Below are positions 591 to 64,000 of a stretch of DNA of 64,000 bases, in pieces. The notes beneath the pieces were generated by a model. That model was not told the DNA's origin. It ran no database searches and saw only the letters and a list, made by a program, of their open reading frames with translations. Source of the stretch: Auanema rhodensis (lineage: Eukaryota > Animalia > Nematoda); the NCBI GenBank assembly GCA_964057225.1, contig OZ059894.1, positions 11,408,001 through 11,472,000 on the forward strand. The letters run 5' to 3'. Positions within the stretch are counted from its first letter, which is position 1. The number at the start of each line of letters is the position of its first letter. The position numbers and the translations under genes were made by a program.

Positions 591-1404
591 ACAGTAAAAA
601 GTCCAATCAAGAGAGAAATTTTTTCAACACATAGTTGTTTTTTTTTTAAATATCATTGTTTTTCCTCATAACTCGGTTTAAACTCGTTCTAACCCGTTGA
701 AATACGTCTAGAAAGTCTTTATAACATGCATATGTATGATAGAACTTCATATTTATTGTAATAGAAAATTTTATTTTCAGACGTCTTGGTTAACAATGAT
801 ATGTTTTACCCCCTTATAATTTTTATCATAATGTTCCTTATACGGAACGCTCAATGAAACTTGCTTCCAGAAAAATTTCTTTCTATTTTTTCTTCATATG
901 TACGTAGATACTATAGAGAACTATGATAGAAAACTTTAACATTCACGAAATCATCATTTCTCATTACGCTACGGAGGTTTAAAAAGCTGTGTTTTACCTT
1001 ATAATAGACCGGAAAACCCTTGTGTTAAAACTGGACCGTTTTTACACATATAAAAATGTCCCGTATTCGGGACCCTAATGTAACTTTTGATTCCCTATAT
1101 TTTTTTTCATGAAATTTACAATCTACTGTAGAAAGAAGAATTATTTTTATAAAAACTGTAAATTTTTGAAAAATGAAAACAAAACGAAAACAAAAACAAC
1201 TTTTTTTTGAACATTTTCTCACACAAGGGTCCCCCCTTACCTACTTTTTTTCTCATTACTCGTTTCAACCTCATCCGATCACTCTGCAAACATGTTTAAT
1301 CGTTCTAACTTGTTGAAATACGTCTTAAAAGTCTAAACAACATGCATATGCATAATAGAAACCACCCGAATAGGCCCCCACGCACTAAACGAGATATATA
1401 CATT

Positions 1405-1720
1405 ACCAGTATAGTAATAGAACACATATTGAAGATTAATTCGATAAGAACAATTTATTGACGTAGAGAATGTTTGTTCCGAAAAACTACAATATTAAAC
1501 TATAAAAGTAACAAAAGCGTAGAGGCAGCAAAGACATGAATAAACATAAATGTAAATACAGAATTACCAGGTAGTACATAAGTATGACAAAAAATTATAA
1601 GAAAGCCATGAAAATAGAAGGTTTGTGAACAAATGAGAGGTACATCTTTGATCGTATAGTCATTTCTAAACCGTTCGTATGCTGCAGCATCGTCATAAGC
1701 GTCACTCAAGTTGAATTTCC
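1405..1720 (-). mobile_element. Degenerate relic of element B tandem junction (B 3' end + U2 nt 39-78 + B 5' start); present in 17 units
   Basis: 1416-1455 matches U2 nt 39-78 at 36/40; 1456-1499 matches 63137-63180 at 38/44; ACCAGTATAG (1405-1414) is identical to 63915-63924; patchier similarity extends to ~1720. Confidence 0.8.
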
Positions 1721-1770
1721 ATGTGTACTACACGATTTTCATTCTTATTGTTACATTCTTTCCCTGAGGG

Positions 1771-1956
1771 AATGGGCCGTTCCCGCCAGCAGTGCAAGAG
1801 CGGGTCGACCCGTGAGGTGGAGCTAGCAAGCCAGCATCTACCTCAAGTCTCAAAAATCGGTTAACCTTATTGTGAACCAATGGAACACATATCGAAGGTT
1901 AATTCGATAAGAACGATTACTACACTTTGATCTTAGCCAAAAGGCCGAGAAGCGAT
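1771..1956 (-). ncRNA. U2: U2 spliceosomal snRNA (~186 nt)
   Basis: Reverse complement ATCGCTTCTCGGCCTTTTGGCTAAGATCAAAGTGTAGTA..., stem IIa TATCGAA/TTCGATA, Sm site GATTTTTG, stem-loop IV with TTGCAC loop; 3' end approximate. Confidence 0.96.
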
Positions 1957-15490: not shown

Positions 15491-16670
15491 ACAGTAAAAA
15501 GTCCAATCAAGAGAGAAATTTTTTCAACACATAGTTGTTTTTTTTTTAAATATCATTGTTTTTCCTCATAACTCGGTTTAAACTCGTTCTAACCCGTTGA
15601 AATACGTCTAGAAAGTCTTTATAACATGCATATGTATGATAGAACTTCATATTTATTGTAATAGAAAATTTTATTTTCAGACGTCTTGGTTAACAATGAT
15701 ATGTTTTACCCCCTTATAATTTTTATCATAATGTTCCTTATACGGAACGCTCAATGAAACTTGCTTCCAGAAAAATTTCTTTCTATTTTTTCTTCATATG
15801 TACGTAGATACTATAGAGAACTATGATAGAAAACTTTAACATTCACGAAATCATCATTTCTCATTACGCTACGGAGGTTTAAAAAGCTGTGTTTTACCTT
15901 ATAATAGACCGGAAAACCCTTGTGTTAAAACTGGACCGTTTTTACACATATAAAAATGTCCCGTATTCGGGACCCTAATGTAACTTTTGATTCCCTATAT
16001 TTTTTTTCATGAAATTTACAATCTACTGTAGAAAGAAGAATTATTTTTATAAAAACTGTAAATTTTTGAAAAATGAAAACAAAACGAAAACAAAAACAAC
16101 TTTTTTTTGAACATTTTCTCACACAAGGGTCCCCCCTTACCTACTTTTTTTCTCATTACTCGTTTCAACCTCATCCGATCACTCTGCAAACATGTTTAAT
16201 CGTTCTAACTTGTTGAAATACGTCTTAAAAGTCTAAACAACATGCATATGCATAATAGAAACCACCCGAATAGGCCCCCACGCACTAAACGAGATATATA
16301 CATTACCAGTATAGTAATAGAACACATATTGAAGATTAATTCGATAAGAACAATTTATTGACGTAGAGAATGTTTGTTCCGAAAAACTACAATATTAAAC
16401 TATAAAAGTAACAAAAGCGTAGAGGCAGCAAAGACATGAATAAACATAAATGTAAATACAGAATTACCAGGTAGTACATAAGTATGACAAAAAATTATAA
16501 GAAAGCCATGAAAATAGAAGGTTTGTGAACAAATGAGAGGTACATCTTTGATCGTATAGTCATTTCTAAACCGTTCGTATGCTGCAGCATCGTCATAAGC
16601 GTCACTCAAGTTGAATTTCCATGTGTACTACACGATTTTCATTCTTATTGTTACATTCTTTCCCTGAGGG

Positions 16671-16819
16671 AATGGGCCGTTCCCGCCAGCAGTGCAAGAG
16701 CGGGTCGACCCGTGAGGTGGAGCTAGCAAGCCAGCATCTACCTCAAGTCTCAAAAATCGGTTAACCTTATTGTGAACCAATGGAACACATATCGAAGGTT
16801 AATTCGATAAGAACGATTA
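16671..16819 (-). pseudogene. U2: U2 snRNA nt 38-186, 3' part of interrupted gene
   Basis: U2 match ends at ...GAACGATTA, then element 3' end ATGGTTTATTG. Confidence 0.93.
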
Positions 16820-18648
16820 ATGGTTTATTGAATAACTAATGTTATGATACAATAAATAACCAATAAAAAAGAGCCCAGAATCGGGGAGACGGTATTACCA
16901 GTACAACTTAAAACAGCAAGTAATTAAAAAGTACATAATAAGACACATTGCCAACAGAGGCTAAAACGACTCAAGAGTCGGGGGAGTGGGTTAAAAAAAA
17001 TGAACAAAAAAATGAATATTAAAGCAGAACAATGAGAAATCAAGTGCCGCTATGATCAAACAATTTGAGTGCCTACGGCAATGATGTTAAAAATAAACAA
17101 CAAAATACATGTACCAATGAAGGTCAGAAAGAAAGAAACAAAAGACAAAAATAAGTAATACAAAAAGTAAATACATTACAATCAAATCACAAACAAGTCA
17201 ATTGATAATTTCTTCTTCATATTGCCTTACACCAGAAACATGTTCCACGTAGATATTCCTGGCCCACTTGATGGTATCGGCGACGACGAGCTTCTCCATT
17301 AGCCGGTTGTAGTGGCTGCTGATCTTGAGTGATCGGAGGGCTTGTCCGTTGAGCGGGTCCATAGTTCCAAGCATTCCTACGACATATGCTTCTACACTAG
17401 TCTTATAACCAAGACATTGGTATTGGCTGGCTATGTCAGCATATTTCCTCTCCTTTATCATACGCGCGGCTATCATGGCTTGACGGCGGTTTTCATAGCT
17501 CACTGTAACATCAACGATACTACAGTGTTTTGCGTCATGATCGACCACTACTATGTCAGGTCGGAGTGTACTATTAATGCCAGGAAGAGGCTGGTTAGTG
17601 TAAACTTCTCCGTTTTTAGGCTCTGGCAGGGCTTTGATAAGACGGTCCACGATGTTGTTGTGGCGGAGTTGGATTGCTCTCGTGTGAGAGTGGCAGTGTC
17701 CAAGAACATGTGCAGCAGTTTCGTTGGAGTAACTACACCTGCGGCACTGTTTGTTTCCTTCTCCGTGTCTTCTACAGCCATTGAGCTGGAGAGTATTGAG
17801 TCGAGCCTTGTGGATGAATCGCCAATCAGCAAACCGTATGAAATCTCCCTTCGCCATAAAGTGATTGGACGCTTTGTTGAGCATTGTGACATCAAAGACT
17901 TTCCCTTGATCCGGTTTTTGAAGAAGGATCCGAAGGTCTTTCAGCCATAATGCACGTCGCAGGCTTCTGTGGCATAGTGAAGGTGTTAACAGTTGGTTGT
18001 TTAGATTGAGTTCTAAACCACTTTCGAGGCATGTCCAGTTAGCGTTGATGAGTTTCTTGAGTTGACGCATCGCTACTCTTACTCTAGTCCAGATGGAGGA
18101 AACATCAGATGTTTCGGTGTCGAAAATGCCATCAACGGAACCGTTGTAATATGCAGCTGTCTCATCGTTACTGGCTTGACGTTTAATCCTTTTTGATGCT
18201 ACTTTTTTTTGAGTCTTGATGCGCAATATCAGCTACTACAAGATCAGATGACTTCAAAAGTTGGTAGGCATGAGTGACTTCACAGACGTCTGACAGGTGT
18301 TGGAGTCGAGAGAGACCAAGTCCGCCGTAGTTAGTTGGCAGGTAGATTGGTTCAGCACTGGCGTTTGGAGGATAGTGCATCCATCTACGGGCACAGCGTT
18401 TGAGTTCTTTGTCAAAGGCGACTAGTTTACTCTTTGGGACGTGGCCATTCGTCATATGAAAATTAAGGCAGGGCATCAGGAAGGTGCGTACTGCGTCACC
18501 ATTGTGGTCTGAGTAGGATCGCGGAATAGGAGCGCAGATTGAACAAGAAAAAGGGCTCTGAAGAGGCACCTTTAGCTTGTAAAGCCCTTGCTCCATCTCT
18601 AGCAGATCTAAAGACTTACGTAGTACAGTTGCAATATCGATTTAGCCA
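16820..18648 (-). mobile_element. Utopia-like U2-targeting RLE non-LTR retrotransposon, copy 1 (1881-bp internal deletion)
   Basis: Both ends identical to full-length copies; deletion junction ...GCGTCA|CCATTG at 18498. Confidence 0.93.
17198..18596 (-). pseudogene. Deleted retrotransposon ORF: partial ZnF fused to post-RT linker, CCHC and RLE; +1 frameshift in T-run at ~18203-18210
   Basis: ORFs 18183-18596 (SDHNG|DAVRTF) and 17198-18226. Confidence 0.88.
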
Positions 18649-18744
18649 TTAACCTTATTGTGAACCAATGGAACACATATCGAAGGTTAATTCGATAAGA
18701 ACGATTACTACACTTTGATCTTAGCCAAAAGGCCGAGAAGCGAT
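18649..18744 (-). pseudogene. U2: U2 snRNA nt 1-96 fused to element 5' end
   Basis: ATCGC...AATAAGGTTAA then TGGCTAAATCG (element). Confidence 0.93.
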
Positions 18745-58040: not shown

Positions 58041-59220
58041 ACAGTAAAAAGTCCAATCAAGAGAGAAATTTTTTCAACACATAGTTGTTTTTTTTTTAAA
58101 TATCATTGTTTTTCCTCATAACTCGGTTTAAACTCGTTCTAACCCGTTGAAATACGTCTAGAAAGTCTTTATAACATGCATATGTATGATAGAACTTCAT
58201 ATTTATTGTAATAGAAAATTTTATTTTCAGACGTCTTGGTTAACAATGATATGTTTTACCCCCTTATAATTTTTATCATAATGTTCCTTATACGGAACGC
58301 TCAATGAAACTTGCTTCCAGAAAAATTTCTTTCTATTTTTTCTTCATATGTACGTAGATACTATAGAGAACTATGATAGAAAACTTTAACATTCACGAAA
58401 TCATCATTTCTCATTACGCTACGGAGGTTTAAAAAGCTGTGTTTTACCTTATAATAGACCGGAAAACCCTTGTGTTAAAACTGGACCGTTTTTACACATA
58501 TAAAAATGTCCCGTATTCGGGACCCTAATGTAACTTTTGATTCCCTATATTTTTTTTCATGAAATTTACAATCTACTGTAGAAAGAAGAATTATTTTTAT
58601 AAAAACTGTAAATTTTTGAAAAATGAAAACAAAACGAAAACAAAAACAACTTTTTTTTGAACATTTTCTCACACAAGGGTCCCCCCTTACCTACTTTTTT
58701 TCTCATTACTCGTTTCAACCTCATCCGATCACTCTGCAAACATGTTTAATCGTTCTAACTTGTTGAAATACGTCTTAAAAGTCTAAACAACATGCATATG
58801 CATAATAGAAACCACCCGAATAGGCCCCCACGCACTAAACGAGATATATACATTACCAGTATAGTAATAGAACACATATTGAAGATTAATTCGATAAGAA
58901 CAATTTATTGACGTAGAGAATGTTTGTTCCGAAAAACTACAATATTAAACTATAAAAGTAACAAAAGCGTAGAGGCAGCAAAGACATGAATAAACATAAA
59001 TGTAAATACAGAATTACCAGGTAGTACATAAGTATGACAAAAAATTATAAGAAAGCCATGAAAATAGAAGGTTTGTGAACAAATGAGAGGTACATCTTTG
59101 ATCGTATAGTCATTTCTAAACCGTTCGTATGCTGCAGCATCGTCATAAGCGTCACTCAAGTTGAATTTCCATGTGTACTACACGATTTTCATTCTTATTG
59201 TTACATTCTTTCCCTGAGGG

Positions 59221-59369
59221 AATGGGCCGTTCCCGCCAGCAGTGCAAGAGCGGGTCGACCCGTGAGGTGGAGCTAGCAAGCCAGCATCTACCTCAAGTCT
59301 CAAAAATCGGTTAACCTTATTGTGAACCAATGGAACACATATCGAAGGTTAATTCGATAAGAACGATTA
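59221..59369 (-). pseudogene. U2: U2 snRNA nt 38-186, 3' part of interrupted gene
   Basis: Same junction as 16819. Confidence 0.93.
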
Positions 59370-62300
59370 ATGGTTTATTGAATAACTAATGTTATGATAC
59401 AATAAATAACCAATAAAAAAGAGCCCAGAATCGGGGAGACGGTATTACCAGTACAACTTAAAACAGCAAGTAATTAAAAAGTACATAATAAGACACATTG
59501 CCAACAGAGGCTAAAACGACTCAAGAGTCGGGGGAGTGGGTTAAAAAAAATGAACAAAAAAATGAATATTAAAGCAGAACAATGAGAAATCAAGTGCCGC
59601 TATGATCAAACAATTTGAGTGCCTACGGCAATGATGTTAAAAATAAACAACAAAATACATGTACCAATGAAGGTCAGAAAGAAAGAAACAAAAGACAAAA
59701 ATAAGTAATACAAAAAGTAAATACATTACAATCAAATCACAAACAAGTCAATTGATAATTTCTTCTTCATATTGCCTTACACCAGAAACATGTTCCACGT
59801 AGATATTCCTGGCCCACTTGATGGTATCGGCGACGACGAGCTTCTCCATTAGCCGGTTGTAGTGGCTGCTGATCTTGAGTGATCGGAGGGCTTGTCCGTT
59901 GAGCGGGTCCATAGTTCCAAGCATTCCTACGACATATGCTTCTACACTAGTCTTATAACCAAGACATTGGTATTGGCTGGCTATGTCAGCATATTTCCTC
60001 TCCTTTATCATACGCGCGGCTATCATGGCTTGACGGCGGTTTTCATAGCTCACTGTAACATCAACGATACTACAGTGTTTTGCGTCATGATCGACCACTA
60101 CTATGTCAGGTCGGAGTGTACTATTAATGCCAGGAAGAGGCTGGTTAGTGTAAACTTCTCCGTTTTTAGGCTCTGGCAGGGCTTTGATAAGACGGTCCAC
60201 GATGTTGTTGTGGCGGAGTTGGATTGCTCTCGTGTGAGAGTGGCAGTGTCCAAGAACATGTGCAGCAGTTTCGTTGGAGTAACTACACCTGCGGCACTGT
60301 TTGTTTCCTTCTCCGTGTCTTCTACAGCCATTGAGCTGGAGAGTATTGAGTCGAGCCTTGTGGATGAATCGCCAATCAGCAAACCGTATGAAATCTCCCT
60401 TCGCCATAAAGTGATTGGACGCTTTGTTGAGCATTGTGACATCAAAGACTTTCCCTTGATCCGGTTTTTGAAGAAGGATCCGAAGGTCTTTCAGCCATAA
60501 TGCACGTCGCAGGCTTCTGTGGCATAGTGAAGGTGTTAACAGTTGGTTGTTTAGATTGAGTTCTAAACCACTTTCGAGGCATGTCCAGTTAGCGTTGATG
60601 AGTTTCTTGAGTTGACGCATCGCTACTCTTACTCTAGTCCAGATGGAGGAAACATCAGATGTTTCGGTGTCGAAAATGCCATCAACGGAACCGTTGTAAT
60701 ATGCAGCTGTCTCATCGTTACTGGCTTGACGTTTAATCCTTTTTGATGCTACTTTTTTTGAGTCTTGATGCGCAATATCAGCTACTACAAGATCAGATGA
60801 CTTCAAAAGTTGGTAGGCATGAGTGACTTCACAGACGTCTGACAGGTGTTGGAGTCGAGAGAGACCAAGTCCGCCGTAGTTAGTTGGCAGGTAGATTGGT
60901 TCAGCACTGGCGTTTGGAGGATAGTGCATCCATCTACGGGCACAGCGTTTGAGTTCTTTGTCAAAGGCGACTAGTTTACTCTTTGGGACGTGGCCATTCG
61001 TCATATGAAAATTAAGGCAGGGCATCAGGAAGGTGCGTACTGCGTCAGCTTTCTGCCATTCAGCAAGTAAGGATTTGTCAATTTTTTCCAAGTGTTGACT
61101 CATAATATTCACTGTTGGAACCGCAGACTTATGTAAATGCATTCCAGTAGGGATTCCCAGGTGGGAGTAGCTGTCGAATTTGCTGAGAGCGGGTAGAGAG
61201 GAGCTCTGTAGCATGTATGAGGCTGTTGATATTTTCCCTTTGTCGATCGTCAAGGTGGCGCATTTCGCTGGTTTGAAGGTCAAGCCTGTGAAATTAGCCG
61301 CATTTGATGCTGCGTCCAACATTTTCTGTAGATCTTCTGATGATGAGGAGACCAGGGCAAGGTCATCGGCGTACGCTAGCACAGCGATGTTGTGGTTGTG
61401 TAGCTTATAGCCAGTAGAGGATTCCAAGATGGTTTTAATTAGAGGTTCAATGGCAAGGTTGAACAGGATCGGAGATAGTGGGGATCCTTGTAACACACCT
61501 GCATGAACTGGAATGGTCGATGTGAGTCCGGAGCCTGTCTGGATTCTTGTAGAGGCATCTGTGTATAGAGCTCGTACTCGGGATATTGAGGCTTCAGCCA
61601 CTCCTGACCATCTTAGAACGTCTAGCAGAGTTTCGTGTGGCAGCGATCCAAAAGCGTTTGCGAGATCAAGCCAAGCAATTGCAATTTTCTCACGTTTACG
61701 TTTAGCGTCCGCAATGGTACTTTGCAACATAAAGTTGTGTTCCATGCATCCAGCTTTGGCCACAAAGCCCTTTTGGGAGGGAGAAAGTCTTTTTTCTGCT
61801 CTTGCCCATGTTAGCAGTCGATGCGTAAGACAAGCTGAGTACGTCTTACCAATTGTGCACGAAAGTGCTATTGGTCGCCAGTTGTTAATGTCAGCTTTAT
61901 CACCTTTCTTATGGATGAGGACGGTGGTCGACTCTTTCCAGGAAAAAGGGATGTGTCCTAGCTTGTGTACGGTGTTAAATATCGCTGCTAATATGTGACC
62001 TCCTTGGTCAAATTTCTTCCAGTGCGAGTATCGAAGTCCATCAGCTCCTGGAGCCGTATCGCTGCAACGTCGTATGCGTTCCCAGACTTCCAAAGGGGTG
62101 AAAACACCTTCTAATGGGTCGGTACTAGCTGGCAAATCCGGTCTGGTGACTGTGATGGGGAGGGCTGGGCCTTGACTGCTGTGAACAGAAAGGAAATGTT
62201 TTTCAACCTCTGCAGATGGTATGGTGCAGGTTTCACTTTGTTCTCCGAGCAGTTGTCGAAAGGCTTTCTTCTTGTTGGCCCTCCAGAGCTTCTGGAGCTT

Positions 62301-63078
62301 CATCGCCTGGGTTTTTTGGTCTTCCTCAGGTTGTGTGTGTGGTCGGCGCCTTTGTCGGAAGTTGGGAACTTTGATCATAATGTCAAGAGACTTTCTGATT
62401 GCGTCTACCAACTCTTCCAGGACCTGCTCGAGCTCACTTTTGCACACAACCTTTTTAATTCTATCCACCCAAGTATTTTCAGAGTTTCTATTCGGATCAG
62501 GGTCGGCAAAAAATGGTTCTGTACTCGAAACCCTGATCTCGTTGAATATTTCACTCTCTCGCGGAAGGGGGGAAACTTCGGCCTCTGGGGACAAGTCCAG
62601 AATTGGGGCCTCAAACAAGCGTACCGTTGATGGAGATCCTTGTTCCTGTCCACTGGATGATGTTTCCTCCATTGTACGCTCCTCCACGGGCGGGGTGGTC
62701 GTCCTTGTGCCTGGTGGCCGGGTGTTCCTGATCCTCCGCAATATAGGGCGGGAACTGGGCTCTCTCGGAGATAGAGGTGAGATCACCACAGTTTCCTCTA
62801 TGATGCGGAGGCATCCTTCAGCTTTTTTCTGATGGCTTTTAACGGCCTTCAGATTGCTGGTGAGGCCACAGGCACGGCACTCAAATTCTACTCCGACCTC
62901 ATGTTCTCTCCGAAGATGGCGGACGAGACCATTGTGGTCTGAGTAGGATCGCGGAATAGGAGCGCAGATTGAACAAGAAAAAGGGCTCTGAAGAGGCACC
63001 TTTAGCTTGTAAAGCCCTTGCTCCATCTCTAGCAGATCTAAAGACTTACGTAGTACAGTTGCAATATCGATTTAGCCA
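59370..63078 (-). mobile_element. Utopia-like retrotransposon, copy 6 (full length, 3709 bp)
   Basis: 52-nt unique 5' UTR, intact ORF, 378-nt 3' UTR ending AATAAACCAT; no poly(A) tail or LTRs. Confidence 0.95.
59748..63026 (-). CDS. Non-LTR retrotransposon polyprotein, 1092 aa (2 ZnF, RT, CCHC, RLE)
   Basis: Same motifs as 37367-40645 (YADD, CRRC..H..C, RHN, RPD, KERKY). Confidence 0.96.
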   Translation of the reverse strand: MEQGLYKLKVPLQSPFSCSICAPIPRSYSDHNGLVRHLRREHEVGVEFECRACGLTSNLKAVKSHQKKAEGCLRIIEETVVISPLSPREPSSRPILRRIRNTRPPGTRTTTPPVEERTMEETSSSGQEQGSPSTVRLFEAPILDLSPEAEVSPLPRESEIFNEIRVSSTEPFFADPDPNRNSENTWVDRIKKVVCKSELEQVLEELVDAIRKSLDIMIKVPNFRQRRRPHTQPEEDQKTQAMKLQKLWRANKKKAFRQLLGEQSETCTIPSAEVEKHFLSVHSSQGPALPITVTRPDLPASTDPLEGVFTPLEVWERIRRCSDTAPGADGLRYSHWKKFDQGGHILAAIFNTVHKLGHIPFSWKESTTVLIHKKGDKADINNWRPIALSCTIGKTYSACLTHRLLTWARAEKRLSPSQKGFVAKAGCMEHNFMLQSTIADAKRKREKIAIAWLDLANAFGSLPHETLLDVLRWSGVAEASISRVRALYTDASTRIQTGSGLTSTIPVHAGVLQGSPLSPILFNLAIEPLIKTILESSTGYKLHNHNIAVLAYADDLALVSSSSEDLQKMLDAASNAANFTGLTFKPAKCATLTIDKGKISTASYMLQSSSLPALSKFDSYSHLGIPTGMHLHKSAVPTVNIMSQHLEKIDKSLLAEWQKADAVRTFLMPCLNFHMTNGHVPKSKLVAFDKELKRCARRWMHYPPNASAEPIYLPTNYGGLGLSRLQHLSDVCEVTHAYQLLKSSDLVVADIAHQDSKKVASKRIKRQASNDETAAYYNGSVDGIFDTETSDVSSIWTRVRVAMRQLKKLINANWTCLESGLELNLNNQLLTPSLCHRSLRRALWLKDLRILLQKPDQGKVFDVTMLNKASNHFMAKGDFIRFADWRFIHKARLNTLQLNGCRRHGEGNKQCRRCSYSNETAAHVLGHCHSHTRAIQLRHNNIVDRLIKALPEPKNGEVYTNQPLPGINSTLRPDIVVVDHDAKHCSIVDVTVSYENRRQAMIAARMIKERKYADIASQYQCLGYKTSVEAYVVGMLGTMDPLNGQALRSLKISSHYNRLMEKLVVADTIKWARNIYVEHVSGVRQYEEEIIN

Positions 63079-63136
63079 TTAACCTTATTGTGAACCAATG
63101 GAACACATATCGAAGGTTAATTCGATAAGAACGATT
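63079..63136 (-). pseudogene. U2: U2 snRNA nt 39-96 fragment between element B and Utopia copy 6
   Basis: Exact U2 match TTAACCTTATTG...GAACGATT. Confidence 0.92.
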
Positions 63137-63924
63137 TATTGAAGTAGATAATGTTTGTCCCGGAGGACTACAATATTAAAATAATTACTGAAGCCCGAAG
63201 GCAGCGAGAAATAGTAAGGATACTACCTGCACTGAGTGCGTCGTATCATAAAAAAAGAGATAGCTAATGGGCAAGTTGAAGAGCTTGAAATTAACAATGA
63301 CGTCACTAGAAGTAAAGTTTTCTATCTGCAGCTGCGGGTAAAGAGGGTCAGCGTAAGCAGAATTCAATTCTACCAACAATTAGTGGGAACATTGAGAGAA
63401 CAGATGAAGGAGGAAATTGTAACTTCAAGTAAAATAGATTATATCTTCAGCTGCGGGTAAAGAGAGTCAGCTTTGTACAGATTACTAGTTTACATAAGAA
63501 GTGGTAACATTTCAAAAAAGGAGCACAACATAAAAAACGAGACTACGGACTATGAGGTAAATGTTATCATTGTCTGGATCGATGATTCGGCATTTGATTG
63601 CAGCTGCGGATTGAGTGGATCAGCTTGCATGGCGTCCGCATTCGACATCAGGGAAAATGATGAGTTTCTTGAGGTCCGGCTCGGCGGGCTGTTATGTCCT
63701 ATTCCCTGTTGATGGTGTTGTTGTCCTTGAGCTTGTTCTTCTTCCCAGAAAAAAAAAAACTGTGAAGCTGAAGAGTCCTATTAAACGTCTTTAAACGCAA
63801 GATTAATAAGAAGCTACTACAGCTAACACAGGACCGCCTCAAGGCCTGGTAGATCAACCAGTGTTGCTTCAATCACCAAGTATTGCGGCCTGGGCCCTTG
63901 GATCAATTCACAACACCAGTATAG
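63137..63924 (-). mobile_element. Element B: 788-bp U2-targeted, probably non-autonomous retroelement
   Basis: Inserted at the same U2 site; flanked by duplicated U2 nt 39-79; ends TCAATAA; no RT or endonuclease ORF. Confidence 0.8.
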
Positions 63925-64000
63925 CAATGGAACACATATCGAAGGTTAATTCGATAAGAACGATTACTACACTTTGATCTTAGCCAAAAGGCCGAGAAGC
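63925..64000 (-). pseudogene. U2: U2 snRNA nt 4-79 fused to element B 5' end (cut by window edge)
   Basis: CAATGGAACACATATC...GCCGAGAAGC matches U2. Confidence 0.92.

What the first reader, a model, noticed from the sequence alone, without database searches (positions are those of the whole stretch)
63137..63924. Second, non-autonomous U2-targeted element nested in the Utopia leader
Seen: 788 bp of sequence unlike the Utopia body, at the same U2 position (after nt 38-39), with its own U2 leader to nt 79 (41-bp duplication), AATAAA across the 3' junction and no RT or endonuclease ORF. Inference: a SINE-like hyperparasite with a U2-derived head, driven by the host U2 Pol II promoter and mobilised in trans, or the deleted remnant of a second autonomous U2-specific family. 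With the Utopia copies and the spacer relic, it makes a three-layer host/element/parasite system in one snRNA array.
Basis: partly seen in the sequence, partly recalled or inferred. Interest (0 to 1): 0.85.

Follow-up and report, generated by a model that had tools for sequence, protein, structure and literature searches.

The report
Non-coding rider element in U2 genes
A 788-base, protein-less mobile element sits in U2 snRNA genes of this roundworm at the exact base used by the Utopia retrotransposon. Its tail matches a second, almost extinct Utopia lineage rather than the abundant one beside it, so it looks like a SINE-like parasite that has outlived its partner.

Summary
Window 63924..63137 (- strand) is a 788-bp ORF-less element, called X here, flanked by U2[..1-79] upstream and U2[39-96] plus a Utopia copy downstream. 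AATAAA spans its 3' junction.

X is a family, not a one-off. There are 47 copies in four subfamilies (742-865 bp), all in the 1.2-Mb U2/5S array. Every copy examined or paired by junction coordinates starts after U2 nt 79, and all but one chimera end before nt 39.

The subfamilies share a 106-nt head (83-98% identity) and a ~125-nt tail (67-92%). Their bodies are nearly unrelated (32-58%).

X has no detectable homology to the abundant resident Utopia ("Utopia-1"). New here: a second autonomous lineage, "Utopia-2", exists as a single copy 443 kb (0.44 Mb) before the window's start. It is 50% identical in protein to Utopia-1 and has one in-frame stop. Its last ~84 nt are homologous to X's tail (E=1e-13).

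The "spacer relic" is a Utopia-2-type 3'UTR, then U2[39-78], then the start of X.

Best reading: a SINE-like non-autonomous retroposon of the Utopia-2 lineage, probably read from the U2 promoter. Fresh jumps are not shown, and crossover could have made the stacking.

Earlier agents of this scan already called X a Utopia passenger on other windows of this genome.

The parts
63925..64000 (-). U2 head, nt 4-79 (nt 1-3 and the promoter lie beyond the window end). It still holds an uninterrupted 38/39 target site.
   Evidence: Rfam U2, model 7-84, 64 bits; locus L020: upstream match of 79 nt.
63137..63924 (-). Element X, subfamily Xa, 788 bp, non-coding.
63819..63924 (-). X head module (X nt 1-106). 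It is 83-98% identical among the four subfamilies, GC-rich, predicted to be structured, and of unknown origin.
   Evidence: No Rfam family. No HDV-like fold shared by Xa and Xd.
63260..63818 (-). X variable body (X nt 107-665), 32-58% identical between subfamilies. It carries three diverged internal repeats, each with a CCGCAGC motif.
   Evidence: (self-match, 81% over 53 nt). TRF finds no array.
63137..63259 (-). X tail module (X nt 666-788). The last ~80 nt (63137-63215) are homologous to the 3' end of Utopia-2.
   Evidence: nhmmer E=1e-13; 77% identity over 82 nt.
63157..63168 (-). Terminal 4-bp hairpin with an xNCG tetraloop, 20 nt from the 3' end.
   Evidence: paired in 7 of 7 sequences (X subfamilies, Utopia-2, spacer relic), with 1 compensatory and 3 wobble changes. 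Statistically weak (74 of 500 shuffles reach it).
63135..63140 (-). AATAAA formed by X's last 4 nt plus U2 nt 39-40.
63079..63136 (-). U2 nt 39-96. This is both the downstream target copy of X and the leader of the Utopia-1 copy.
59370..63078 (-). Utopia-1, full length, 3709 bp. The intact 1092-aa ORF is at 63026..59748 and has an RT domain.
59217..59369 (-). U2 nt 38-190, the 3' part of the interrupted gene.
1404..1673 (-). Fossil found in every array unit; this is one example, and it repeats about every 2.48 kb. It consists of a Utopia-2-type 3'UTR (1673..1456), U2 nt 39-78 (1455..1416) and X nt 1-11 (1414..1404).
   Evidence: (173 of 223 nt identical to the Utopia-2 3'UTR).

Best explanation
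X is one copy of a family of short (742-865 bp), non-coding, non-autonomous retroposons that live only in U2 snRNA genes.

Architecture. X is built like a SINE: a conserved 106-nt head, a freely varying body, and a conserved tail. The last ~80 nt of the tail, including a small xNCG-loop hairpin and the terminal ...CTAC(T/G)TCAATA, are shared with a second U2-specific autonomous retrotransposon lineage, Utopia-2.

Inferred mechanism.
1. The interrupted U2 gene is read from the U2 promoter, giving an RNA that starts with U2 nt 1-79 and continues into X.
2. A Utopia-type protein (reverse transcriptase plus restriction-like endonuclease) nicks the antisense strand of a U2 gene at nt 38/39. This was originally Utopia-2's protein. 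Utopia-1's may do it now, if anything still does.
3. The protein recognises the X tail and reverse-transcribes X by target-primed reverse transcription.
4. The 5' end is sealed by homology between the U2 leader on the cDNA and the U2 head of the target.

Consequences. This rebuilds an intact target site upstream of the new copy, so elements can stack. In the window, an X lies in the head of a gene that already held Utopia-1.

Shown: the anatomy, the copy census, the constant junctions, the tail homology to Utopia-2, and the fossil in the spacer.
Inferred: transcription from the U2 promoter, trans-mobilisation, homology-driven 5' joining, and the order of events in the window.
For: 1. Family and junctions. 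There are 47 copies: 35 with a Xa/Xb/Xc-type 5' joint and 12 with an Xd-type joint. All are in the C1 array. All have U2 nt 79 upstream, and all except chimera L029 have nt 39 downstream. Six Xd copies are inferred from spacing and junction pairing, not read.

2. Module pattern. Between subfamilies the head is 83-98% identical, the body 32-58% and the tail 67-92%.

3. Tail homology to an RT-encoding element. Utopia-2 lies at C1:10961685-10965622 and is 3938 bp. Its protein is 50% identical to Utopia-1 over residues 8-1088. Its last ~84 nt match the X profile at E=1e-13. The terminal hairpin is kept in 7 of 7 sequences.

4. No homology of X to Utopia-1 beyond a ~19-nt terminal motif.

5. Junction census. 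Only three kinds of interrupted 3' junction exist in the genome: the X/Utopia-2 type (47), the Utopia-1 type (~70 by subtraction) and a U2 self-copy type on contig C8 (27).

6. Leader likely RNA-templated. The 5' joint is fixed per family: 79 for X (47 of 47), 89 for Utopia-2, and 96 for Utopia-1 (47 of 47). All share one 3' site. Four 5'-truncated Utopia-1 copies join at scattered places: U2 nt ~20, U2 nt ~157, and spacer positions 751 and 796.

7. U2-promoter transcripts appear to be used at this nick. On C8 there are tandem units of U2[39-190] plus 11 nt of 3' flank behind a U2 head.

8. Indirect sign of expression. Small runs of the same species (one study) hold 39-77% of X's words. Yet run X3 (one of the four holders) and two sister runs of the same study (X10, X11) hold 0.00 of an array spacer that is about 8-fold more abundant as DNA.

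9. Spread across unit types. Twenty identical X copies sit in units whose upstream 700 nt differ by up to 29 substitutions.
Against: - No 5'-truncated X copy and no 5'-junction variation were found. All copies are in one array, and about 20 of the Xa copies lie in one regularly spaced block (3309/2947-bp steps). Much of the copy number is therefore array amplification.
- No insertion outside the array and no polymorphism data are available.
- Utopia-2 is a single copy with a TAA stop between the RT and the C-terminal endonuclease region, so the proposed partner may be dead.
- The sharp boundaries of the conserved head and tail fit recombination or template switching as well as selection. L028 is an Xa body with an Xb tail.
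- Covariation support for the structures is weak.
- The head has no recognised promoter or ribozyme.
Confidence: 0.68

Rival explanations
1. X is an immobile array variant. One ancient insertion, or a piece of foreign DNA, in a U2 gene was spread, diversified and shuffled only by unequal crossover and gene conversion. The window's "nesting" arose by crossover within the 41-bp U2[39-79] shared by an X-bearing unit and a Utopia-bearing unit.
For: - All copies are in one array, with block-wise regular spacing.
- Junctions are invariant and no copy is truncated.
- Every stacked arrangement seen (L020, L022, L027, L031, L035) can be drawn as a crossover in U2[39-79].
- Recombinant copies L028 and L029 exist.
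Against: - Four subfamilies keep the head and tail while their bodies are nearly unrelated.
- The tail is homologous to the 3' end of an RT element.
- The 3' joint is exactly the Utopia nick site.
- Identical X copies lie up to 0.9 Mb apart (about 0.6 Mb for the six identical 787-nt copies), in different contexts and unit haplotypes.
- A fossil of the same junction type is fixed in the spacer.
Confidence: 0.15
2. X is mobilised by the abundant resident Utopia-1: a hyperparasite of the element it is stacked on.
For: - Utopia-1 has at least 40 intact 1107-aa frames and 47 full-length 5' ends, so its enzyme is available.
- It uses the same nick site.
- X and Utopia-1 share a terminal motif, AACATTA..TTCAATA.
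- One copy, L029, carries an X body joined to the last 179 nt of Utopia-1.
- Recently identical X copies need some active enzyme if they moved at all.
Against: - Apart from ~19 nt, the tails are unrelated: 49-50% identity over the last ~80 nt against 77% with Utopia-2.
- The conserved terminal hairpin is absent from the Utopia-1 tail.
- R2-type enzymes are of the stringent, tail-recognising kind (PMC3414825).
Confidence: 0.12
3. X is a short internally deleted element (SIDE) of a Utopia-2-like parent, with both ends inherited from the parent and only the middle lost.
For: The 3' ~84 nt come from a Utopia-2-type tail. R2 SIDEs set the precedent.
Against: The first ~700 nt of X match neither the 5'UTR nor the ORF of Utopia-2 or Utopia-1, on either strand. 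The leader joints differ (79 against 89). X has its own conserved head and an X-specific proximal tail hairpin.
Confidence: 0.05

Closest known systems
R2 SIDEs and R2/R1 hybrid SIDEs of Drosophila (Eickbush & Eickbush 2012, PMC3414825)
   Same: They are non-coding, non-autonomous riders of a site-specific retrotransposon with a restriction-like endonuclease. They insert at the parent's exact site in a tandem RNA-gene array, are read from the host gene's promoter, and carry a 3' end taken from the autonomous element. Hybrids with another element's tail exist, as in L029 here.
   Different: SIDEs keep the parent's 5' ribozyme and show variable 5' junctions. X has a head unrelated to either Utopia, no detectable ribozyme, an invariant 5' joint with a 41-nt U2 repeat, four deep subfamilies, and a Pol II snRNA gene as host instead of rDNA.
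Utopia (Kojima & Jurka 2015, PMC4640811)
   Same: The same target base (downstream U2 starts at nt 39), the same orientation, and stacking or tandem copies in U2 genes.
   Different: X encodes nothing. The paper does not mention non-autonomous partners (0 occurrences). It reports no target duplication in arthropods and 20 bp in reptiles. Here the U2 repeats are 41 bp (X), 51 bp (Utopia-2) and 58 bp (Utopia-1).
SINEU, SINEs with U1/U2-derived heads in crocodilians (Kojima 2015, PMC4494074)
   Same: A short retroposon that begins with U2 sequence and lacks a Pol III head. That paper discusses possible dependence on flanking transcription.
   Different: SINEU copies are dispersed, poly(A)-tailed and mobilised by Tx1-type elements into a Mariner. 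X never leaves U2 genes, has no A-tail, and its U2 part cannot be told from the target.
R9 of bdelloid rotifers (Gladyshev & Arkhipova 2009, cited in PMC13580325; details from my own knowledge)
   Same: An R2-superfamily element with an unusually long target duplication (126 bp).
   Different: R9 is autonomous and lives in 28S rDNA. Here the family-specific repeat length argues for an RNA-templated leader rather than a staggered cut.

Membership tests
SINE-like non-autonomous partner of a LINE | Short and non-coding | tested here: met
   742-865 bp; longest ORF 79 aa; no Pfam match.
SINE-like non-autonomous partner of a LINE | 3' tail shared with an autonomous element | tested here: met
   The last ~84 nt match the Utopia-2 tail: nhmmer E=1e-13, 77% identity.
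SINE-like non-autonomous partner of a LINE | Head derived from tRNA, 7SL or 5S with an internal Pol III promoter | tested here: not met
   No Rfam family at E<=10 apart from the flanking U2. The origin of the head is unknown.
SINE-like non-autonomous partner of a LINE | Independent retrotransposition events (new loci, truncated copies, polymorphism) | tested here: inconclusive
   There are several contexts and subfamilies, but no truncated copy and no copy outside the array, and crossover can mimic stacking.
SIDE (short internally deleted element) | 5' end inherited from the parent element | tested here: not met
   The X profile finds no match in the 5' regions of Utopia-1 or Utopia-2.
SIDE (short internally deleted element) | 3' end inherited from the parent and the same insertion site | tested here: met
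SIDE (short internally deleted element) | 5' self-cleaving (HDV-like) ribozyme | tested here: not met
   No Rfam ribozyme. My loose descriptor finds no fold shared by Xa and Xd. This is a weak negative.
Utopia (autonomous U2-specific RLE retrotransposon) | Encodes RT and a restriction-like endonuclease | tested here: not met
   X has no such ORF. The neighbouring 3709-bp element does.
Utopia (autonomous U2-specific RLE retrotransposon) | 3' junction at U2 nt 38/39, in the same orientation as U2 | tested here: met
   PMC4640811.
SINEU (snRNA-headed SINE) | The U2-derived head travels with the element to non-U2 sites | tested here: not met
   No X copy lies outside U2 genes. The dispersed U2[40-78] repeats elsewhere are a 55-bp satellite, not X.

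The most novel reading that the evidence does not exclude
X is a live snRNA-promoter-driven parasite with three properties.
1. Its RNA starts as a capped U2[1-79]-X fusion.
2. Its 5' joining by leader homology rebuilds the target each time, which allows unlimited stacking.
3. It has outlived its own partner lineage (Utopia-2, down to one broken copy) and is switching to Utopia-1, for which the X/Utopia-1-tail hybrid L029 would be a snapshot.

The same enzyme also retro-copies plain U2 pre-snRNA into U2 genes (the C8 arrays).
Probability: 0.25. Interest if true: 0.75.

Novelty: new variant of a known kind. Interest (0 to 1): 0.58.

Why it matters
Non-autonomous partners of site-specific retrotransposons with a restriction-like endonuclease are rare. 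R2 SIDEs are the textbook case. The papers I could search report none for Utopia or for any snRNA-gene target.

This array holds a whole small ecosystem in one assembled place:
- about 400 U2 heads;
- about 70 3' junctions of one autonomous lineage (47 with a complete 5' end);
- one last copy of a second autonomous lineage;
- 47 riders carrying the second lineage's tail;
- hybrids between elements;
- a fossil of the same stack fixed in every repeat unit.

It makes three questions testable:
- How does an R2-type enzyme choose its RNA? The candidate signal is an ~80-nt tail with a 4-bp hairpin.
- How are precise 5' joints made? The candidates are an RNA-borne leader and a staggered cut.
- Can a parasite survive the loss of its partner?

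The value is in mobile-element biology. It is not a new kind of system.

Tried and rejected
- Known RNA family or ribozyme in X. Rfam at E<=10 finds nothing but U2. My HDV-like descriptor gives no fold shared by Xa and Xd.
- Remnant coding sequence. tblastn of the Utopia-1 protein against the X subfamilies gives only noise (E>=19). Pfam finds nothing.
- Tandem repeats in X. TRF finds none. Only an 81% self-match of 53 nt is present.
- Covariation for head and tail structures. There are too few and too similar sequences. No compensatory pairs were found; one was found, which 74 of 500 shuffles reach.
The duplex energy is only about 2 SD below shuffles, so I do not rely on it.
Later patterns start at U2 nt 39 or later, and U2 was compared only inside local scripts.
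- Whole-array download.
- Tails of the nearest Utopia relatives in metagenome contigs (L073, L074). Their 3'UTRs are unrelated and do not reach a U2 flank.

Full report
SETTING
The window is G000:C1:11408001-11472000 of a 181-Mb eukaryotic assembly. An earlier scan note calls the host a roundworm. The nearest named relatives of the Utopia protein fit an invertebrate host, and two of the three are nematodes: Globodera 44% and Diploscapter 52% (partial); the third is a scorpion, Centruroides, at 43%.

The window is a tandem array of ~2.48-kb units, each with one U2 snRNA gene and one or two 5S genes, all on the - strand. Everything below is described in U2 orientation, that is, on the - strand.

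OBSERVATION
An intact U2 gene is at window 1956..1767. Resident Utopia copies ("Utopia-1") read U2[1-96], then a 3709-bp element with an intact 1092-aa RT-bearing ORF, then U2[38/39-190].

At the window's end the order is:
- U2[..1-79];
- 788 bp, called X (63924..63137);
- U2[39-96];
- Utopia-1;
- U2[38-190].

X ends ...CAATA and is followed by U2 nt 39, so AATAAA spans the joint. X has no ORF above 79 aa and no Pfam match. It has no similarity to Utopia-1 by BLAST or by a profile search.

X IS A FAMILY
A genome search finds 29 copies at 99-100% identity, 28 full-length and one (L029) matching X nt 1-749, plus diverged relatives, all on C1 between 10.9 and 12.1 Mb. Cutting every fetched copy at its U2 flanks gives four subfamilies:
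- Xa, 787/788 bp;
- Xb, 783 bp;
- Xc, 742 bp;
- Xd, 865 bp.

Every fetched copy starts right after U2 nt 79 and, except chimera L029, ends right before nt 39.

Junction patterns counted over the whole genome give 35 Xa/b/c-type and 12 Xd-type 5' joints in the array, 47 copies in total. Six of the Xd copies were read; the other six are inferred from spacing and from pairing with 3' joints. On the 3' side there are 47 joints of the X type, of which 46 belong to X and one to Utopia-2.

For scale, the genome has 399 uninterrupted target sites and about 70 Utopia-1 3' joints. The latter figure is by subtraction: 144 interrupted joints, less 47, less 27.

ARCHITECTURE
Alignment of the subfamilies shows:
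- a head (X nt 1-106) at 83-98% identity;
- a body at 32-58%, essentially unrelated apart from short islands such as CCGCAGC;
- a tail (nt 666-788) at 67-92%.

The head is GC-rich and predicted to be structured, but it has no Rfam match and no shared HDV-like fold. The tail has an X-specific proximal hairpin and a distal part with a 4-bp xNCG-loop hairpin 20 nt from the end.

Two copies are mosaics. L028 is an Xa body with an Xb tail. L029 is Xa nt 1-747 joined at a T-run to the last 179 nt of Utopia-1.

THE SECOND AUTONOMOUS LINEAGE (NEW HERE)
One X-type 3' joint, at C1:10961663, had no matching X 5' joint. Fetching it (L065, L066) showed a 3938-bp element in the order Utopia-1 3' part, U2[38-89], element, U2[39-190].
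- Its frame aligns to Utopia-1 residues 8-1088 at 50% identity in one piece.
- It has a single TAA stop (C1:10963021-10963023), roughly at residue 810. That is after the RT domain and before the C-terminal endonuclease region.
- It is unique in the assembly. A search with its protein returns itself at 100% and otherwise only Utopia-1 copies, at 47-60% identity over the matched part.
- Its last ~84 nt match the X profile at E=1e-13. Identity is 77%, and the terminal CTACGTCAATA is the same as in Xc.
- Nothing else in it matches X.

I call it Utopia-2. The Utopia-1 tail shares only a ~19-nt terminal motif with X and lacks the hairpin.

On the usual rule that a non-autonomous element carries its partner's tail, X belongs to the Utopia-2 lineage, not to the element it is stacked on.

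THE SPACER RELIC
It has three parts:
- 217 nt homologous to the Utopia-2 3'UTR (173 of 223 nt identical; 85% over the last 87 nt);
- U2 nt 39-78;
- the first 11 nt of X.

So a stack of a Utopia-2-type element followed by X existed before the present unit was homogenised across the array. In the fossil, the hairpin carries the one compensatory change seen.

HOW THE JOINTS ARE MADE (INFERENCE)
Three families share one 3' site but have three fixed 5' joints: 79 for X (47 of 47), 89 for Utopia-2, and 96 for Utopia-1 (47 of 47 full-length 5' ends). By contrast, four 5'-truncated Utopia-1 copies join upstream DNA at scattered places: U2 nt ~20, U2 nt ~157, and spacer positions 751 and 796.

A fixed staggered cut by one enzyme would not give family-specific lengths. 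An RNA that begins at the U2 start site and carries its own heritable stretch of U2 would. The cDNA end then pairs with the U2 head of the target, as proposed for R2 elements whose RNA keeps some 28S sequence (PMC3774820, abstract only, seen; the details are from my own knowledge).

This also leaves the head with an intact 38/39 site, which explains the stacks and tandems seen:
- X then Utopia-1 (window, L035);
- Utopia-1 then X (L022, L037);
- Utopia-1, Xb, Utopia-1 (L031);
- Xd then Xa (L027);
- four Xd copies at 906-bp steps.

About 7 of the 47 X copies share a gene with Utopia-1. That is close to the ~17% of heads that carry Utopia-1.

On contig C8, U2 heads are followed by 163-bp tandem units made of U2[39-190] plus 11 nt of 3' flank, joined exactly at nt 39. 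I read these as U2 precursor RNA copied at the same nick. If so, U2-promoter transcripts do reach this machinery.

EXPRESSION

Index-level evidence is as follows. Four 20-M-letter runs of the same species (one study, library type not recorded) hold 39-77% of X's words. One of those holders (X3) and two sister runs of the same study (X10, X11) hold 0.00 of a 791-bp array spacer that is about 8 times more abundant as DNA. This pattern is what RNA libraries containing X transcripts would give. It is suggestive only.

MOBILITY
Points in favour:
- the subfamily and module pattern;
- the tail homology;
- the exact nick site;
- identical copies up to 0.9 Mb apart (about 0.6 Mb for the six identical 787-nt copies), in different contexts;
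- twenty identical X copies next to upstream spacers that differ by up to 29 substitutions.

Points against:
- no truncated copy;
- no variable joint;
- no copy outside the array;
- a regular block of ~20 Xa units that is plainly array amplification;
- a partner that may be dead.

The window's stacking can equally be drawn as a crossover within the shared 41 bp.

COMPARISON AND NOVELTY
X works like an R2 SIDE. It is built like a SINE, sharing only the tail with its partner and having a foreign head, and it lacks a Pol III head. It is not a SINEU, because it never leaves U2 genes.

Kojima & Jurka 2015 do not mention non-autonomous partners. I found no later report.

Within this scan the element was already found on other windows of the same genome. 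Three follow-ups called it a non-autonomous passenger of Utopia.

Verdict: a real feature, a new variant of a known kind, of moderate to high interest for mobile-element biology.

Noticed in passing
G000:C8:10054200-10056660 (L071) and C8:6982900-6983500 (L072); 27 joints in all, on C8 only: U2 heads are followed by tandem 163-bp units made of U2 nt 39-190 plus 11 nt of 3' flank, each joined exactly at nt 39 (the Utopia nick site). They look like U2 precursor RNA retro-copied into U2 genes, then perhaps expanded by slippage.
   Followed up: partly
L041-L051 (for example G000:C1:18483841 and 18498243, an inverted pair 14.4 kb apart; many sites on C3 and C4): A dispersed 55-bp tandem repeat made of U2 nt 40-78/79 plus ~16 nt sits at both ends of ~14.4-kb inverted-pair elements, about 230 hits outside the array. 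Its U2 part has the same limits as X's duplicated stretch. It recalls the U2_sat of Ciona mentioned by Kojima & Jurka. The carrier element was not identified.
   Followed up: partly
window 16450-18706: An internally deleted Utopia-1, about 1.87 kb shorter. It keeps the U2[1-96] leader with ~150 nt of the element's 5' end, and the 3' ~1.7 kb. This is a SIDE-like derivative of Utopia-1 itself.
   Followed up: no
L029 = G000:C1:11336991-11340737: A hybrid copy: Xa nt 1-747 joined at a T-run to the last 179 nt of a Utopia-1 variant (96% identity), then U2[38-96] and Utopia-1. It is either a 3.6-kb deletion in an X/Utopia stack or a tail swap.
   Followed up: partly
L067-L070 (C1:11355500, 10940600, 11156400, 11314800): 5'-truncated Utopia-1 copies begin at element nt ~1630-1750 and join upstream DNA at U2 nt ~20, U2 nt ~157, or 751-796 nt into the spacer of the preceding unit. 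These are independent, imprecise 5' joints, and the truncation points cluster.
   Followed up: partly
G000:C1:11223000-11303000: Part of the array is inverted, with U2 and Utopia copies on the + strand.
   Followed up: no
Utopia-2 5'UTR (L066, about 60 nt after the U2[38-89] leader) and the first ~20 nt of Xd: Short tracts are antisense to the U2 5' region: a 10-nt tract in Utopia-2 and a 9-nt tract in Xd opposite U2 nt 31-39. This agrees with an earlier scan note. The overall duplex energy for the X head is only about 2 SD below shuffles.
   Followed up: partly
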